Shown here: positions 21,215 to 27,730 of the stretch, piece after piece
Numbering within the stretch: position 1 is the first letter of the stretch
Layout: every line of letters begins with the position of its first letter
From: Ministeria vibrans ATCC 50519
Lineage: Eukaryota; Protista; Filasterea
Direction: 5' to 3'
Length of the DNA stretch: 64,000 nucleotides
Assembly (NCBI GenBank): GCA_943704425.1
Contig: CALSCP010001139.1
Coordinates: 1 to 64,000, forward strand
Notes under the pieces: generated by a model
Database searches by the model: none
What the model saw: the letters and a program-made list of their open reading frames with translations, nothing else
What the model was told of the DNA's origin: nothing
Translations under genes and position numbers: made by a program

Positions 21215-24200
21215 TTACACACGGGATCGCGTCGAACGGCGCGTTGCCACAACAGGCTCGGCAGCTTCAGCCACCTTGCGAGTGGTCCTCTTGCGCTTGG
21301 TGGGCTCAGGCTCACTCACTTCGGGCTCCACAGTGACAGCGGCAGTCGCCGCCGCCTTGCGCTTGCTTCCTCGGGCAGTAGGTGCGGCAGCAACAGGCTC
21401 CTCAACAACCGCAGCTGCGGTGGCGCGTCTGCTGCGCTTCGCGGGTGCCTCCACAACTGGCTCATCAACCACGGCGGCGGCAGCCTTGGTAGCACGCTTG
21501 GCGCGCTTTACGACAGGCTGCTGCTCCTCAACAGCCACAGCCTCAGGCTCAGCAACCGCCTTGCTTGCCGTGCGCTTGGTACCACGCGTGGCTCGCACCG
21601 GTTTCTCAACGACATCAGTAGCAGCAGCAGTAGCAGCAGCGCGTCTACCACGCTTGGCCGGCACCTTCTCCACCACCGCGGGCTCCTCCACTACTGCCTT
21701 GGCAGTACGCTTGGCGCGCTTCACGACGACCGGCTGCTCCTCAGCCACCGCCTCAACCTCAGCAGCCTTAGTCTTGCGTTCACGCGTCGTTCTCTTCACA
21801 GGCTCCTCCTTCTCCTCCACTGCAGCAGCAGCAGCGGCCCTCTTGCGGCCACGCTTAGGTGCCACCACCGTCTCCTCAACCACACTGACTGCCGGCTCCT
21901 CCTGCACCACCGCTGGCTCAGCTGCCGTCTTCTTAGAGGTCTTCTTGGGGGTCTTTTTTGCCTTGACTGCCGACACAGGCGCCTCCTGCTGCTCCTGTTC
22001 CTGCTCAACAACAACAAGTGCCTTCTTGGCCGTCTTAGGCGTCTTGACAAGTTGTGCAACACCTGTGAGATCTGGCGACGCCACGAGACGCGCTGACTGC
22101 TCATGGAACATCTCACGCACACCAGTGAGTCTGGGACTGGCACAAGGAGTGCGAGGCTCGCGCAAAAGCTCTCGAACGCCCGTGAGCACAGGAGACGCAG
22201 TCGTACTAGCAGTAGCAGTAGCAGTAGTAGTAGCAGAAGTGGTGGTGGGGGAAGAAGCGGGTGAGACATGGGTGAGCTCAATGCCCTTTCTGATGGCATT
22301 GCGGACGGGGGTGTTAAGGGCCTTCTTGAGAGTGCGCTTCTTGAGCTGAACGCCCTCCTTGATGGCAGTGCGCACGGGGGTGTTGAGTGCCTTGGTGACC
22401 TTCTTGCTCTTGAGTTGAACACCCTCCTTGATTGCGTTGCGCACTGGTGTGTTGAGTGCGGTGGGCAGTGGCTCTTTGCTCTTGAGTTGAACACCCTCCT
22501 TGATTGCGTTGCGCACTGGTGTGTTGAGTGCGGTGGGCAGCTGCTTCTTCTTGAGCGTGACACCTTCCTTGATGGCAGCACGCAGTGGGGTGTTGAGGGC
22601 CATGGGCAGTGGCTCTTTGCTCTTGAGTGTGACTCCTTCCTTGATTGCGTTGCGCACGGGTGTGTTGAGGGCCTTGGTCAGCTCTCGCTTAGTCAGTGCA
22701 ACGCCCTTCTTAATGGCCTCGCGCACTGGCGTGTTAAGGCCCTTGCGCAACTCCTTCTTGCGCAGTGCAACACCCTGAACAATTTGCTGGCGCACAGGCG
22801 TGTTGAGACCCTTGGGCATCTTCTTGCTCTTGAGTTCGACTCCTTCCTTGATGGCAGCGCGCACAGGCGTGTTGAGACCCTTGGGCATCTTTTTGCTCTT
22901 AAGCTGGACACCTTCCTTGATTGCGTTGCGCACGGGTGTGTTGAGTGCGGTTGGCAGCGGCTCCTTGCTCTTGAGCTCGACTCCTTCCTTGATGGCAGCG
23001 CGCACAGGCGTGTTGAGACCCTTGGGCATCTTCTTGCTCTTAAGCTCAACTCCTTCCTTGATGGCAGCGCGCACAGGCGTGTTGAGACCCTTGGGCATCT
23101 TCTTGCTCTTGAGCTCGACCCCTTCCTTGATGGCAGCGCGCACAGGCGTGTTGAGACCCTTGGGCATCTTCTTGCTCTTAAGCTCAACTCCTTCCTTGAT
23201 GGCAGCGCGCACAGGCGTGTTGAGACCCTTGGGCATCTTCTTGCTCTTGAGCTCGACTCCTTCCTTGATGGCAGCGCGCACAGGCGTGTTGAGACCCTTG
23301 GGCATCTTCTTGCTCTTGAGCTCGACTCCTTCCTTGATTGCGTTGCGCACGGGAGTGTTGAGTGCGGTAGGCAGAGGCTCTTTGCTCTTGAGCTCGACTC
23401 CTTCCTTGATGGCAGCGCGCACAGGCGTGTTGAGACCCTTGGGCATCTTCTTGCTCTTGAGCTGAACGCCCTCTTTGATTGCGTTGCGCACGGGAGTGTT
23501 GAGTGCCTTGGTGACCTTCTTACTCTTGAGCTGGACACCCTCCTTGATAGCAGCGCGCACTGGAGTGTTGAGTGCCTTCATCATTTCTCGCTTCTTGAGC
23601 GTGACTCCTTTGCGAATGGCATCGCGCACGGGTGTTCGCAGTGCCGACTTGCGGTATACCTTGTTGAGCGAGGCCCCTGCGTCTCCCTGCTCAATCGCCC
23701 GCTTGAGTGCCTCGTCCATTCGTGCGCGGTTTGCACTGCCCGTCAGCTTCTCCATCGAGTCGTCTGAGCTGTCTTCCTCGTCCTCGGCCTCGTCATCGTC
23801 GTCACTTTCCTCGTCTACGTCTTCGTCGCTCTCCTCTTCTTCGTCACTGTCGCTCTCCTCTTCCTCCTCCTCTTCATCGTCGTCCTCCTCGGGATCCTCC
23901 ATGGCACTGCGTCGCGATGACAGATGCTCTTTCAACTCCTCCACTTGGTCCGGCTCCGGCACTGCTGCTGCACTGACAGTGGGCATGGCTGCGCGTCGCA
24001 GCTGCACTCCCTTGGCAATATCCTGGCGCAGTGGTGTGTTGAGGCGCAGGGCACGCTTGGCGGCGACACGCTCCTTGGGCGTAAGCTGCTTGGCGGGGGT
24101 GTTGTCCTCCTCCTCGTCGTCGACGTTGTCCGCCTTGGACGGCGACTCTTTGGCCATCTCGGCAACCGCTGTCAACTTGATGCCCTTGGCAATTTGCTCG

Positions 24201-25500
24201 CGAAGTGGTGTCTGCAGACGAGAGCGCGATTTGAGCGCAGGAGAAGATTTGGCAGGTGAGAGGGTGGCGGGCACGGGCGACGAGGGCGCACTGGCGGCGA
24301 CCGCGGCGAGACGGGGCGAGCTGCGGATCTTGAGGATGGTCTTGCCGGGGGTACCAGACTTGCGGGGCTGTGTGCCGCGGCGCACGGGCGTGCTCGGCGG
24401 GAGGTGCTTGTCGATGAGCTCGGGCGTGAGCTGTGGGCCAAAGCTGACCGAGTAGCGCTTGCTCAGCGGCTTGTGTGGCGTCACAAGATTTTCCAGGTTG
24501 CCCAGGGCTCCGCTGGACGGCGCAGCGGCGTCAACAGGCTGCTTTGCAGTGGATGTGGCGGCGGCAGGAGTCGGCATGGCGCGGGGGGCGGCGGGTGCGG
24601 CGGTGGAAGCGGAAACGGGAGTTGACGAGAGCGAACGACGCTTTTTGCTCGCCGACACGGGCGCATCGGCCGCCGCATTGGCCGGGCCCAACGGAGAACG
24701 GCTTGCCTTGGTGGTGCGGCGCGAAGGGTGGACTTTGGACGGAGTCACCTGTAAACACGATTGATTTTTGAAAAAAATGAGATGACGCGAAGTATTATTT
24801 GAAAATTTGACACAAAATCGAACCGTAAGGTATTCAAAGCGGAACTTGCGTTCTCCAATCTGGATCACATCGTCATGGCAGACTCGCTGAGCACTGGCAG
24901 CGACTGGCTTGCCGTTGACATACGTCAGATTTGTCGTACTTTCGTTTTTGATAAACACCTGTCAAAAAATTTATGAGCTTTGTTTTTTTGAAATTTCTCG
25001 TTGGGAAAAACTAAGAAAAAAACAAGAAAAAATTGCCCACGTCTAGGATCCAGCAGTTATACATCAATGAAAAACGCCTTTTGGAGCTTCCAAAATGTCT
25101 CGGTGGACAACAAAATGAAAATTTGCTTTTTTTGAATAGTTCTGTTTCACTCCAACAGGCAACAAGGACGATATTCCAAGCGCCGGGTTTGTTTGAAATG
25201 ACATCAAATCAATGCATTGAGCGGGATGATGAAGGAGATCAAGTGAAGAGTGGCGCACAAATGAAATTTACGAAAATTTGAATTTTTTTTTGAAAATGTA
25301 AATTTTTCGAAATGTCTTACGCTTCCGTCAGTTTCGTCACGCCAGAGCTTAGTGTGAACCTTGCTGACGTTCTGCAACTGAATGCGCACGTCGCAAGTAG
25401 GATCGCGTCCAAATATGCATTCGGAACGAGAGAAGGGGAATTTGTTGCCGTCGACGCCGCTGCGGCGGATCACTACAATGCTGCCAATACGCGATGACAT
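21215..25500 (-). CDS. Ki-67-like protein (FHA, PP1-binding motif, tandem repeats, basic tail), 3 exons
   Basis: Exon 1 IVVIRRSGVDGNKFPF..CIFGRDPTCDVRIQLQNVSKVH closely parallels the Ki-67 FHA. Exon 2 completes it (TYVNG..HDDVIQIGERKFRFE). SVSFGPQLTPELIDKHLPPSTPVRRG matches the Ki-67/Repo-Man PP1-binding region. Introns at about 25319-24959 and 24823-24749. Confidence 0.85.
22270..23645 (-). repeat. Coding tandem repeat, 20 units of 69-72 bp (LNTPVRxAIKEGVxLKSKKMPKG)
   Basis: Counted in the ORF translation; the central units are nearly identical at DNA level. Confidence 0.97.
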
Positions 25501-25942: not shown

Positions 25943-27730
25943 TTAAAAGAAGCTTTTCGGTTGTTGCGACTGCTGTTGGAACATGGGCTGTCCCATCATC
26001 TGCTGTTGCGGCTGTTGCGACTGCTGCATGCCCATGGGCGCCTGCATGCCCCCCATGGACATCTGACCCATGCCACCCATCTGACCCATTCCACCCATCT
26101 GACCCATTCCACCCATCTGACCCATTCCGCCCATCTGACCCATTCCACCCATTTGTCCCATTCCGCCATAGTGCGGTTGCTGCTGCATCATAGGAGCACC
26201 GCCAGTAAAGCCCATTCCTCCTCCCATGGCACCCATGCCACCCATGCTGCGCGCGGGCGACGCTGTGTTGCTCGAGCTCGCTGGCTTGGCCTGCATGGGG
26301 CTCAGAGAGGCTGCGTCAATGTTGACCAGACCACCAAAGGCGGTGTTTGCTGCTGCAGGGCGCGCCGGTTGCTGTTGTTGTTGCTGCTGCTGCTGCGGTT
26401 GCATAGACATGGAGCCCATTTGAGCAGTAAGAGGCGTCATACTTGGCTGTAAGGGTTGCATGGGCATTGTAGCGGGTGCTGGTGTCATAAACTGCTGCTG
26501 CTGCTGCTGCGGGTACGACGAAGTCGGCTTTACTGCGGCAGGCGCGGGTGCCGATTGCCACGACTGAGTGGTGGTAGGCGCGGCAGATTCAAAGTCACCA
26601 AAGTCGGCAAAGTCATCGTCGGCAGCAGGGGCAGCGGGAGCAGATTGCTGGAAGGCGGTGAATTGCTGTTGTTGCTGGGGAGCGGGAGCAGTCGTGGTGC
26701 CGCGCGGGTTGAAAAAGTCGTCTTCGACAGCAGCGGGCGCGGCAGCCGAGACGGGCGCGCCAAAGTCGTCGTCGAGGTCAAGGAGAGAGGGGGCAGCGGC
26801 AGCGGGCTTGGCGGGCGCAGCCGCAGCAACAGGAGCGACAGCGACTGGAGCGGGAGCGGGGGTGACACGTTTCGGTGCAGGGGGGGACATCTGCTTGCTG
26901 TGGACGGGCGGAGGAAAATCATCGGCGGGATCGCGACGTCGAGAAGTCTTGGGCGATGGCGAGTCGTAGTCGTAGCGACCACGACCATTACCATCACCAC
27001 CACCGGCTCGTCGTTGCATCTGGGGACTCGACATGGGACTTGAGTTGTCACTGTAGGGTTTCTTTGATGATGTGGATCGTGAGGTGTGCGAGGAGGGCGC
27101 GTAACGGTCGTCATAGCGATCACTGCTGTGACCACCACCACCGCTGCGACCACCATAGCTCGACTGGTGACCATAGTCGCTTCCAAAACCGCCACTGCTA
27201 CTACTGCCACCGCCACCGACACCCACATATTTGTCACGGTTGGTGCGCGCGCGCTTGCGCTCCTCGCGCAGTCGCTCGTCGTCGTTGATCAACGTCGTCA
27301 GCTCCTTGGCCTTGTGACGCACATTCACTCCTTGGTCCTTGTGCTTATCGTCCACAAACTCGTACTTCTCCAACGCACGAATGTCGTAGATGCGGTCACG
27401 CGACTCCTCAACCACTCGCTCCGATCCGTTCTTCACAAGGTACTCCAACAGAAGCAGTGACTAAGACAAAAAAAAGAGAGAGTGTTTGAGACCATCACTT
27501 GGCCGCAAGCATCGTCCCTTGCGTCTCAGACATACCTTGTAGGTGTGGCGCCAGTTCTTCTCCGTCAACATCCGCTTCCACAGCATGTTCATCACTTCCG
27601 GCAAGTGATCGTACGAGTAGGTCGCCTTAGCAATTTCCGTCATCAGCGCACTCGACGCTCCCCACGCCTCCTTGTTCGTCGCCTCGCGCACTTTCACCTC
27701 AATTTCGGTGTAGTTCATGACAACGGCAGT
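25943..27730 (-). CDS. CLINT1: ENTH-domain epsin-related clathrin adaptor (EpsinR/CLINT1-like); first exon not found
   Basis: VVMNYTEIEVKVREATN..WGAS and WRHTYK|SLLLLEYLVKNGSERVV..DQGVNVR; clathrin box LLDLD; DFADF/DFGDF motifs; Met/Gly/Gln-rich tail. Confidence 0.88.

What the first reader, a model, noticed from the sequence alone, without database searches (positions are those of the whole stretch)
21215..25500. Ki-67-like protein with the full vertebrate-style architecture in what looks like a protist genome
Seen: an N-terminal FHA whose first exon (IRRSGVDGNKFPF..CIFGR..CDVRIQL..VSK.H) tracks the Ki-67 FHA. Next is SVSFGPQLTPELIDKHLPPSTPVRRG, then three degenerate repeats SPVLTGVRELL / SPRLTGVREMF / SPDLTGVAQLVKTPK, then a Lys/Arg-rich tail with PKRGRKR ending RRSTRSRV. 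Established: vertebrate Ki-67 has this order (FHA binding NIFK, PP1-binding RVxF region, L.G.KELF.TP repeats, basic chromatin-binding tail) and organises the mitotic chromosome periphery. It is usually regarded as an animal protein. Inference: a chromosome-periphery/PP1-targeting system may pre-date animals.
Basis: partly seen in the sequence, partly recalled or inferred. Interest (0 to 1): 0.82.

Follow-up and report, generated by a model that had tools for sequence, protein, structure and literature searches.

The report
Ki-67-type gene in a protist
This is a real three-exon gene for a Ki-67-like protein in a small, apparently protist genome. Such pre-animal Ki-67 relatives were already reported in a 2026 preprint, so the gene is a new member of a known family. 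Its main repeat region is an overlooked 23-residue unit shared with choanoflagellates, sponges, a jellyfish and a fungus.

Summary
A minus-strand gene (exons 25500-25321, 24958-24827 and 24748-21215) encodes about 1,281 residues.

- **FHA domain:** among solved structures, both halves match human Ki-67 far better than any other FHA protein (E 1.6e-12 against 0.04 for the next).
- **PP1 dock:** it scores above Pfam's PP1_bind cut-off. It matches the published KiR-SLiM motif at 11 of 15 specified positions, and its best structural hit is the Ki-67:PP1 complex.
- **Tail:** the C-terminus is basic.
- **LTGV motifs:** the three motifs are real but do not match the vertebrate Ki-67 repeat profile.

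It holds 20 tandem and 2 dispersed copies of a 23-residue unit, each with a full CDK site (TPVR). The unit is under purifying selection (pN/pS 0.31). It recurs in Ki-67-like proteins of a choanoflagellate, sponges, a jellyfish and a fungus, but in no vertebrate Ki-67 retrieved. Its core resembles WH2 actin-binding motifs but stays below the Pfam cut-off.

The idea that Ki-67 pre-dates animals is not new. A June 2026 preprint lists homologues in Capsaspora, Monosiga, fungi and beyond.

I could not confirm the host species myself; earlier notes of this scan say Ministeria vibrans. The scan had also flagged the repeat array separately, on this same DNA (s1-774571).

Verdict: a new member of a known kind, of moderate interest.

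The parts
25321..25500 (-). Exon 1: start codon and the first half of the Ki-67-type FHA domain (60 codons)
   Evidence: PDB Ki-67 FHA 2AFF E 1.6e-12, next FHA 0.04. Pfam FHA 22.7 bits. 324 library hits, mostly N-termini of long Ki-67 proteins. Single copy in the genome.
24959..25320 (-). Intron 1 (362 nt, GTAAGA...AG)
   Evidence: Read from the sequence. AT-rich. No RNA evidence.
24827..24958 (-). Exon 2: second half of the FHA domain (44 codons)
   Evidence: The only PDB hits are Ki-67 FHA 2AFF/1R21, E 0.004. Pfam FHA profile positions 34-67.
24749..24826 (-). Intron 2 (78 nt, GTTCGA...AG), in frame and without a stop
   Evidence: AT-rich, and its hydrophobic translation is unlike its surroundings. 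Inferred to be an intron.
21215..24748 (-). Exon 3: 1,177 codons plus stop, the disordered body of the protein (pI 10.2, 45 S/T-P sites, 30 full CDK sites)
24344..24463 (-). PP1 docking region: RVxF-like SVSF, the hydrophobic pair, and the KiR-SLiM (exon 3 residues 96-135)
   Evidence: Pfam PP1_bind 36.1 bits above the cut-off of 27. PDB 5J28 Ki-67:PP1 at 4e-7 and RepoMan 5IOH at 6e-6. It is the only such locus in the genome. Motif compared with PMC5005033.
23981..24220 (-). Two dispersed copies of the repeat unit (24155-24220 and 23981-24046)
23714..23953 (-). Acidic block (80 residues, net charge -38)
   Evidence: An equivalent acidic block follows the PP1 site in the sponge and jellyfish proteins.
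22256..23644 (-). Tandem array of 20 units of 23-24 residues. Each unit has a CDK site (TPVR), then I-x-x-G-x-x-L-K and a basic end. Net charge is +79.
   Evidence: TRF period 69, score above 1,000. Alignment A1 with seven invariant columns. pN/pS 0.31. The unit HMM hits relatives and not shuffled sequences. Low-confidence AF2 model with one short helix per unit.
22043..22195 (-). Three copies of SP-x-LTGV-x-[EQ]-[LM]-[LFV], about 20 residues apart
   Evidence: No Pfam Ki-67 repeat hit. A single similar motif sits at the same relative place in three sponge proteins.
21218..22003 (-). C-terminal tail of 262 residues with alternating basic KR clusters and A/V/E spacers (net +21), ending in RRSTRSRV
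   Evidence: No Pfam family (protein 3). Similar arginine-serine/threonine-rich ends occur in sponge, choanoflagellate and unknown relatives.

Best explanation
The gene encodes the single Ki-67-family protein of this genome. This is the non-vertebrate form of Ki-67, a largely disordered basic scaffold.

**Shown here**
- It has a Ki-67-type phosphothreonine-binding FHA domain at the N-terminus.
- It has a PP1 docking site built like that of Ki-67 and RepoMan. The RVxF-like core is SVSF, followed by a KiR-SLiM that matches 11 of the 15 specified positions of the published motif. Three of the four changes are conservative.
- The genome's PP1 carries the arginine equivalent to PP1-gamma Arg20, the residue this motif reads.
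- The rest of the protein is an acidic block, 22 copies of a selected 23-residue unit each with a full CDK consensus site, three LTGV motifs and a basic tail.

**Inferred from what is established for vertebrate Ki-67 and RepoMan**
- The basic tail and array hold the protein on chromatin or nucleolar RNA.
- Mitotic CDK phosphorylates the roughly 45 S/T-P sites. This would cancel the net charge of about +90 and change how the protein coats chromosomes.
- Phosphorylation inside the dock (two of RepoMan's three CDK positions are kept) would keep PP1 off until anaphase.
- PP1 then binds, is concentrated on chromosomes and reverses the phosphorylation at mitotic exit.
- The vertebrate 122-residue Ki-67 repeats appear to be a later replacement for the older 23-residue unit.
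For: - FHA. The library search with exon 1 gave 324 hits. Almost all the long ones start with this FHA, and most carry a KiR-SLiM downstream. The ones I looked up by name are Ki-67 or Ki-67-like: Sapajus, Phallusia and Oscarella.
- PP1 dock: and the motif definition in PMC5005033.
- PP1 Arg20 equivalent.
- Same module order in named relatives: FHA plus PP1_bind in Oscarella, Sanderia, Mylnosiga, Jimgerdemannia and Phallusia. FHA exons lie upstream of the PP1/repeat exon on sponge contigs L002 and L006.
- Repeat unit shared and constrained.
- Charge and CDK sites.
- Quick tree of the exon 1 region: the window sits with the non-vertebrate Ki-67-likes, outside the vertebrate clade and away from the non-Ki-67 FHA proteins, but the tree is weakly resolved.
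- Prior report of non-animal homologues.
Against: - There is no functional or localisation data.
- There is no RNA evidence for the two introns.
- The strict RVxF pattern [RK]-x(0-1)-[VI]-{P}-[FW] is absent. The site reads KRYSVSF, with two residues between Arg and Val. The arginine two residues before the serine, which I recall as part of the Aurora B consensus, is therefore lost.
- The most buried KiR-SLiM residue, Phe, is Ile here.
- The vertebrate Ki-67 repeat profile is not matched.
- No NIFK-binding motif was found in the genome. The preprint predicts no NIFK binding for the Capsaspora homologue.
- The type of mitosis in the host is unknown to me, so a chromosome-periphery role is an extrapolation.
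Confidence: 0.78

Rival explanations
1. The 22 repeat units are WH2-like actin-monomer-binding motifs gated by the CDK site at their head. The protein would then be a PP1-and-actin scaffold, comparable in logic to Phactr or spinophilin, and not only a charged chromosome coat. Another first-stage note (s1-774571) raised this idea.
For: - A profile of the window's units searched against all PDB sequences returns almost only WH2 motifs: N-WASP 3M3N at 9e-9, 2VCP at 4e-6, 6UHC, WAVE1, VopL, MIM and WAVE2.
- An independent profile made only from two other organisms' units again puts WH2 motifs in 5 of 7 hits.
- Six of seven WH2 signature positions fit: hydrophobic at -4, I at 0, G at +3, hydrophobic at +4, L at +6, K/R at +7.
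- Jellyfish units read I-x-x-G-x-x-LKKT.
- The AF2 model gives a short helix followed by an extended stretch in each unit.
Against: - The match covers only 10-13 residues.
- Single-domain E-values are 0.05 to 7.
- Pfam WH2 stays below its cut-off of 23.1 bits: 15.2 bits for the window and 17.9 for Sanderia, with no hit in P0001-P0003.
- The second leucine of the WH2 helix is replaced by a conserved Arg/Lys.
- One sponge lineage has Pro in place of Gly.
- The AF2 confidence is low (pLDDT 54).
- No paper I could search links Ki-67 to WH2.
Confidence: 0.12
2. The protein shares the FHA and PP1 modules with Ki-67 but does not coat mitotic chromosomes. It would work in interphase, for example in the nucleolus or heterochromatin, or as a general chromatin PP1-targeting subunit like RepoMan. 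This fits if the host keeps its nuclear envelope in mitosis.
For: - It is the only PP1_bind gene in the genome, so it may cover both Ki-67-like and RepoMan-like roles.
- Choanoflagellate relatives carry SAP DNA-binding domains instead of LTGV motifs, so the C-terminal parts vary between lineages.
- The preprint reports divergent behaviour of the Drosophila homologue.
Against: - RepoMan lacks an FHA domain, whereas this protein has the Ki-67-specific one.
- The high density of CDK sites points to mitotic regulation.
Confidence: 0.2
3. The feature is an artefact. Either it is a mis-joined gene model or pseudogene, or the contig comes from an animal, so nothing here is pre-animal.
For: I could not verify the splice junctions with RNA, and I could not verify the species.
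Against: - The open frame of 1,177 codons runs through a repeat array that is under purifying selection.
- The splice sites are canonical and in phase.
- The genome is 29.7 Mb and compact, with short introns.
- Several earlier notes of this scan independently name a filasterean.
- In the tree the FHA sits outside the vertebrate clade.
Confidence: 0.04

Closest known systems
Vertebrate Ki-67 (MKI67)
   Same: Both have an N-terminal FHA with the Ki-67-specific leading strand and the phosphothreonine-binding residues. A PP1 dock with the KiR-SLiM lies downstream. Both are long, basic and disordered, with many CDK sites, internal repeats and a basic arginine-rich C-terminal end.
   Different: - About 1,281 residues against about 3,000.
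- No match to the 122-residue Ki-67 repeat profile.
- The repeat region is a 23-residue unit that is absent from the vertebrate proteins retrieved.
- The RVxF core is non-canonical.
- No NIFK-binding motif was found in the genome.
Non-vertebrate Ki-67-like proteins: Oscarella lobularis XP_065828196, Sanderia malayensis and Mylnosiga fluctuans EukProt entries, Jimgerdemannia RUP42697, and the homologues listed in preprint 10.64898/2026.06.18.733134
   Same: - Same order of modules: FHA, PP1_bind, often an acidic block, then an array of units of about 21-24 residues with TP-[VLIM]-[RK]-x-x-I-x-x-G-x-x-L-[KR], then a basic tail.
- Sponges also carry one LTG/FDG-x-x-LF motif before the tail.
   Different: - Sequence identity is only 32-37% over the alignable half.
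- The window has three LTGV motifs and no SAP domain. The choanoflagellate protein and P0001 have SAP domains and no such motif.
- The preprint text that I read or term-searched does not name this repeat unit, the KiR-SLiM or RepoMan. It states that homology outside the FHA is unidentifiable.
RepoMan (CDCA2)
   Same: Both have the RVxF plus KiR-SLiM PP1 dock (PDB 5IOH at 6e-6 and 5INB at 2e-5), with CDK sites inside the dock.
   Different: RepoMan has no FHA domain. The window's dock scores slightly better against Ki-67 than against RepoMan. The genome has only one such gene.
WH2 actin-binding motif (N-WASP, WAVE, VopL, MIM)
   Same: Both have a core of hydrophobic-x-x-x-I-x-x-G-hydrophobic-x-L-[KR]. 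WH2 motifs are the top PDB hits of two independent repeat profiles.
   Different: The match is below Pfam's cut-off. The helix lacks the second leucine. Twenty copies in a row, each headed by a CDK site, are not known for WH2 proteins. There is no experimental link to actin.

Membership tests
Ki-67 family | N-terminal FHA domain of the Ki-67 subtype | tested here: met
   Tested as two exon halves, not joined. Exon 1: 2AFF at 1.6e-12, against 0.04 for the next FHA. Exon 2: only Ki-67 hits. Library hits are overwhelmingly Ki-67 N-termini. The quick tree is weakly resolved.
Ki-67 family | PP1-binding region (RVxF plus KiR-SLiM) downstream of the FHA | tested here: met
   PP1_bind 36.1 bits against a cut-off of 27. 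5J28 at 4e-7. 11 of 15 specified KiR-SLiM positions are identical to the motif in PMC5005033. The strict RVxF regular expression is not met; the site reads KRYSVSF.
Ki-67 family | Ki-67 repeats (Pfam Ki-67 repeat profile, with the FKELF core) | tested here: not met
   No hit in the whole exon 3 at E up to 1, nor in the 97-residue LTGV segment at E up to 10 in the correct frame. Only a short L-x-G-x-x-E-L/M-F/L resemblance remains. This feature defines vertebrate Ki-67 and is not required for the wider family as used in the 2026 preprint.
Ki-67 family | Basic C-terminal chromatin-binding (LR) domain | tested here: inconclusive
   The tail has pI 10.3, net charge +21 and arginine-serine/threonine clusters. 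There is no profile for this domain and no binding data.
Ki-67 family | FHA partner NIFK with its Ki-67-binding motif | tested here: not met
   The Pfam hNIFK_binding profile searched in the whole genome gave one 18-bit hit below the cut-off of 25, in a low-complexity frame. The preprint also predicts no NIFK binding for Capsaspora.
Ki-67 family | Location at the mitotic chromosome periphery, with PP1 recruited at anaphase | not testable with these tools
   Needs microscopy and pull-downs.
RepoMan (CDCA2) | KiR-SLiM PP1 dock without an FHA domain, plus the RepoMan N-terminal domain | tested here: not met
   An FHA domain is present. There is no second PP1_bind locus in the genome.
WH2 motif | Match to the Pfam WH2 profile above the gathering score | tested here: not met
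   15.2 bits for the array and 13.6 for exon 3, against a cut-off of 23.1. Sanderia scores 17.9. P0001-P0003 give no hit.
WH2 motif | Amphipathic helix followed by LKK[TV], as seen in actin-bound structures | tested here: inconclusive
   PDB profile searches put WH2 motifs on top. The AF2 model shows a helix plus an extended stretch in each unit at pLDDT 54. One of the helix leucines is replaced by Arg.
Linker histone H1/H5 | Winged-helix globular domain | tested here: not met
   Pfam Linker_histone scores 43.7 bits on the array, summed over six partial stretches that each span two units. There is no H1 or H5 hit in the PDB, and no such hit in P0001-P0003. I read it as a match of repeats and composition.

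The most novel reading that the evidence does not exclude
The ancestral Ki-67 repeat is the 21-24-residue unit found here and in a choanoflagellate, sponges, a jellyfish and a fungus. On this reading it is a CDK-gated WH2-like motif that binds actin monomers. Early Ki-67 would then have been a chromosome-bound scaffold that brought together PP1 and actin. The vertebrate Ki-67 repeats would be a later replacement.
Probability: 0.12. Interest if true: 0.8.

Novelty: new member of a known kind. Interest (0 to 1): 0.42.

Why it matters
The main claim is real but no longer new.

What this gene adds:
- **A clean non-vertebrate example.** The complete PP1 docking motif is conserved almost residue for residue, and the organism's PP1 keeps the matching arginine.
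- **Recognisable homology in the disordered body.** A repeat unit with a CDK site is shared from fungi to cnidarians, so Ki-67 relatives can be found and aligned without relying on the FHA domain alone.
- **A culturable test system.** If the host is Ministeria vibrans, as earlier notes of this scan say and as I understand that organism to be, the system is a single-copy one. It could show what Ki-67 and PP1 did before animals, and whether the repeats act through charge or by binding a partner such as actin.

Tried and rejected
- **Pfam Ki-67 repeat profile on the LTGV motifs:** no hit.
- **Frame errors of mine:** my first test of that segment (protein 1) and two queries ('pp1' and 'motif3') were out of frame. 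They must be ignored.
- **Pfam WH2 and Linker_histone membership:** rejected as explained in the membership table.
- **NIFK-binding motif in the genome:** only a spurious sub-threshold hit.
- **Word search restricted to the PP1 region:** nothing.
- **ESM Atlas on residues 90-840:** no usable hit.
- **RNA evidence for splicing:** a search with the first 383 residues of exon 3 found no near-identical transcript fragment. P0009 turned out to be an unspliced metagenome ORF.
- **Own check of the species:**
  - Papers on the Ministeria genome gave no assembly figures to compare.
  - The sample accessions are not in the library.
  - The histone genes are spliced, so they could not be looked up by exact sequence.
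  - Eight long ORFs from other contigs are not in the protein collection.
- The FHA domain was therefore never folded or searched as one piece.
- **Human sequence:** nothing in the window looked human.
Full report
**What is there.**
The finding lies on the minus strand. I read a three-exon gene from the sequence:
- Exon 1 is 25500-25321: 60 codons from an ATG, with donor GTAAGA.
- Intron 1 is 362 nt.
- Exon 2 is 24958-24827: 44 codons, with donor GTTCGA.
- Intron 2 is 78 nt, AT-rich, in frame and free of stops.
- Exon 3 is 24748-21215: 1,177 codons plus the stop.

I never joined them, so the FHA domain was tested only as two halves and was not folded. No RNA evidence for the junctions could be found. 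The gene is flanked by ordinary eukaryotic genes: a GDA1/CD39 nucleoside phosphatase downstream and an ENTH-domain gene upstream.

**FHA domain.**
- Pfam sees the FHA profile split across the two exons.
- Against all sequences of solved structures, exon 1 hits the human Ki-67 FHA (2AFF, 1R21) at E 1.6e-12. The next FHA protein is at 0.04.
- Exon 2 hits only those two Ki-67 entries.
- The Ki-67-specific leading strand and the Arg, Ser, His and Asn of the phosphothreonine pocket are aligned and conserved in those alignments.
- A search of 1.84 billion representative proteins with exon 1 gave 324 hits at E up to 0.001.
- Nearly all the long hits start with this FHA, and most carry a KiR-SLiM-like motif further on.
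- Of the ten hits I looked up by name, three are Ki-67 or Ki-67-like (monkey, tunicate, the sponge Oscarella lobularis). Most of the others are unnamed or hypothetical proteins from a whitefish, a jellyfish, a choanoflagellate and a fungus. One, P0011, is a bacterial FHA protein outside the family.
- A quick tree of the 59 alignable columns puts the window in an unresolved group with the non-vertebrate proteins. The nearest by path is the choanoflagellate Mylnosiga. The window lies outside the vertebrate clade and away from two non-Ki-67 FHA proteins. Support is weak, and the careful tree search did not finish.
- The FHA exon is single copy in the genome.

**PP1 dock.**
- Exon 3 residues 96-135 score 36.1 bits on Pfam PP1_bind, against a cut-off of 27.
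- Their only PDB hits are the Ki-67:PP1 complex 5J28 (4e-7) and the RepoMan:PP1 complexes 5IOH and 5INB.
- The published KiR-SLiM is FDxxLP(P/A)N(T/S)PL(R/K)(R/K)Gx(T/S)P (PMC5005033). The window reads I-D-K-H-L-P-P-S-T-P-V-R-R-G-T-Q-P.
- That is 11 of the 15 specified positions identical, with three conservative changes (F to I, N to S, L to V) and one loss (T/S to Q).
- Two of the three CDK positions that block PP1 binding in RepoMan are kept as TP.
- The RVxF core is not canonical. The site reads KRYSVSF, so the strict pattern used in the preprint finds nothing in this protein. I recall that Aurora B phosphorylates a serine two residues after an arginine. On that recollection, that context is lost here.
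- It is the only PP1_bind locus in the 29.7 Mb genome, so there is no separate RepoMan-like gene.
- The genome's PP1 gene (contig C760) has an N-terminal exon that aligns best with PP1-gamma. It carries an arginine at the position of Arg20. That is the residue through which the KiR-SLiM selects PP1-gamma.

- Between about 22256 and 23644 lies a 69-bp tandem array. It encodes 20 units of 23-24 residues, and two more copies stand upstream.
- Seven columns are invariant: L, T, P, R, I, G, L. Every tandem unit carries a full CDK consensus, TP-x-R.
- The array has a net charge of +79. Exon 3 as a whole has pI 10.2, 45 S/T-P sites and a net charge of +90, so full phosphorylation would roughly cancel the charge.
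- Units that are identical in protein are written in different DNA versions. Across all unit pairs pN/pS is 0.31, which shows selection on the protein.
- A low-confidence AF2 model (pLDDT 54) gives one nine-residue helix per unit, often followed by a short extended stretch.

**The same unit elsewhere.**

The word search found only eight relatives, all with PP1_bind and the same unit:
- P0001, from a Logan run of unknown origin.
- P0002 and P0003, one from a contig labelled sponge metagenome and one from a Logan run. Ki-67-type FHA exons lie upstream of them on both contigs.
- P0004 to P0008, from ocean metagenomes.

A profile of the window's units finds 10 to 19 copies in these proteins and none in shuffled versions.

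Among the FHA hits of the library search:
- The window-only profile finds the unit in the jellyfish Sanderia, the sponge Oscarella and the choanoflagellate Mylnosiga.
- A broader profile, built with units from several of these proteins, also finds it in the unnamed protein P0091 and in the fungus Jimgerdemannia. Neither was used to build that profile.
- Neither profile finds it in any vertebrate Ki-67 retrieved.

Pfam confirms FHA plus PP1_bind in the jellyfish, Oscarella, choanoflagellate, fungal and tunicate proteins.

The window's protein therefore has the common non-vertebrate layout. The unit is at least as old as the split of animals and fungi, if the fungal copies are homologous. In mammalian Ki-67 a single TP-x-V-L-K-K-I-I-K-E stretch follows the PP1 dock. 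It looks like a relic copy, but it does not score with the profile.

**The LTGV motifs and the tail.**
- The three SP-x-LTGV motifs are a true internal triplet.
- They resemble the core of the vertebrate Ki-67 repeat as I remember it.
- They give no hit to the Pfam Ki-67 repeat profile.
- Three sponge proteins have one similar motif at the same relative place. The choanoflagellate protein and P0001 have SAP domains there instead.
- The tail alternates KR clusters with A/V/E spacers and ends in an arginine-rich stretch, as in the relatives. No profile exists to test it.

**WH2 resemblance.**
- Another first-stage note (s1-774571) called the units WH2-like.
- Pfam WH2 stays below its cut-off.
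- Even so, a profile of the window's units searched against the PDB returns almost only WH2 motifs: N-WASP at 9e-9 over three motifs, then WAVE1, VopL, MIM and WAVE2.
- A profile built only from two other organisms' units does the same, at non-significant E-values.
- The shared part is a core of about 11 residues. The second leucine of the WH2 helix is a conserved basic residue here.
- I regard actin binding as possible but unproven, at about one chance in eight.
- The Linker_histone hit on the array is best read as a repeat and composition effect.

**Host.**
- The genome has 29.7 Mb in 2,860 contigs. It is gene-dense with short introns.
- Several earlier follow-up notes of this scan name it Ministeria vibrans, a filasterean.
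- My own attempts to verify this failed, so I use the name only as a lead.
- A nearly identical exon 1 occurs on an environmental metagenome contig.

**What is known already.**
- A bioRxiv preprint of June 2026 (10.64898/2026.06.18.733134) identifies Ki-67-like proteins across invertebrates. It also finds them in Capsaspora, Monosiga, three fungi, Thecamonas, Dictyostelium and a thraustochytrid, using the FHA domain and biophysical features.
- It finds PP1 sites only with the RVxF pattern. It states that homology outside the FHA is unidentifiable.
- Its text contains no mention of the KiR-SLiM, RepoMan or WH2.
- The conserved dock and the shared repeat unit are incremental additions.

**Verdict.**
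The gene is a new member of a known kind. The most likely mechanism is a CDK-regulated, chromatin-bound PP1-targeting scaffold. The modules are shown here; their action is inferred from vertebrate Ki-67 and RepoMan.

Noticed in passing
window 24749-24826: Intron 2 is 78 nt long, in frame and without a stop codon. If it were retained, it would add 26 hydrophobic residues just after the FHA domain without breaking the frame.
   Followed up: no
L007 (ENA ERZ23497376, 670-nt contig); P0009: An environmental metagenome contig carries exon 1 at 100% protein identity. Its intron read-through differs slightly from the window, so a very close relative of this organism is present in that sample.
   Followed up: partly
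P0121 and P0113 (mammalian Ki-67), about 13 residues after the KiR-SLiM: Mammalian Ki-67 has one TP-x-V-L-K-K-I-I-K-E-x-P stretch directly after the PP1 dock. It resembles the 23-residue unit of the non-vertebrate proteins and may be a relic copy, but it does not score with the repeat profile.
   Followed up: partly
P0120 / P0159 (Jimgerdemannia flammicorona, fungus): A hypothetical protein of a mucoromycete fungus has a Ki-67-type FHA, PP1_bind above the cut-off, and five weak copies of the TP-x-[RK]-x-x-I unit.
   Followed up: partly
P0125 (ENA, 767 aa): This protein has an FHA close to the Ki-67 type, followed by two PHD fingers and no PP1_bind. It is a different architecture that uses the same FHA subtype.
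   Followed up: no
G000:C760:61935-62461 (L022, L023): The only STPPase_N (PP1-type N-terminal domain) locus found in this genome. Its N-terminal exon is closest to PP1-gamma and has Arg at the Arg20 position. The neighbouring introns are full of (CA)n/(GT)n runs.
   Followed up: partly
L016 (G000:C1671): The histone H2A and H3 genes of this genome are interrupted by introns close to their 5' ends.
   Followed up: no
window 25943-27448 (minus strand): The upstream neighbour is an ENTH-domain (epsin-like) gene. It has a long Q-rich tail and a run of GGMGQM repeats.
   Followed up: no
L001 (Logan SRR24908252); P0001: The closest relative of exon 3 (37% identity) comes from an unidentified sequencing run. 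It has SAP and HeH/LEM-like DNA-binding motifs in place of the LTGV motifs, like the choanoflagellate protein.
   Followed up: partly
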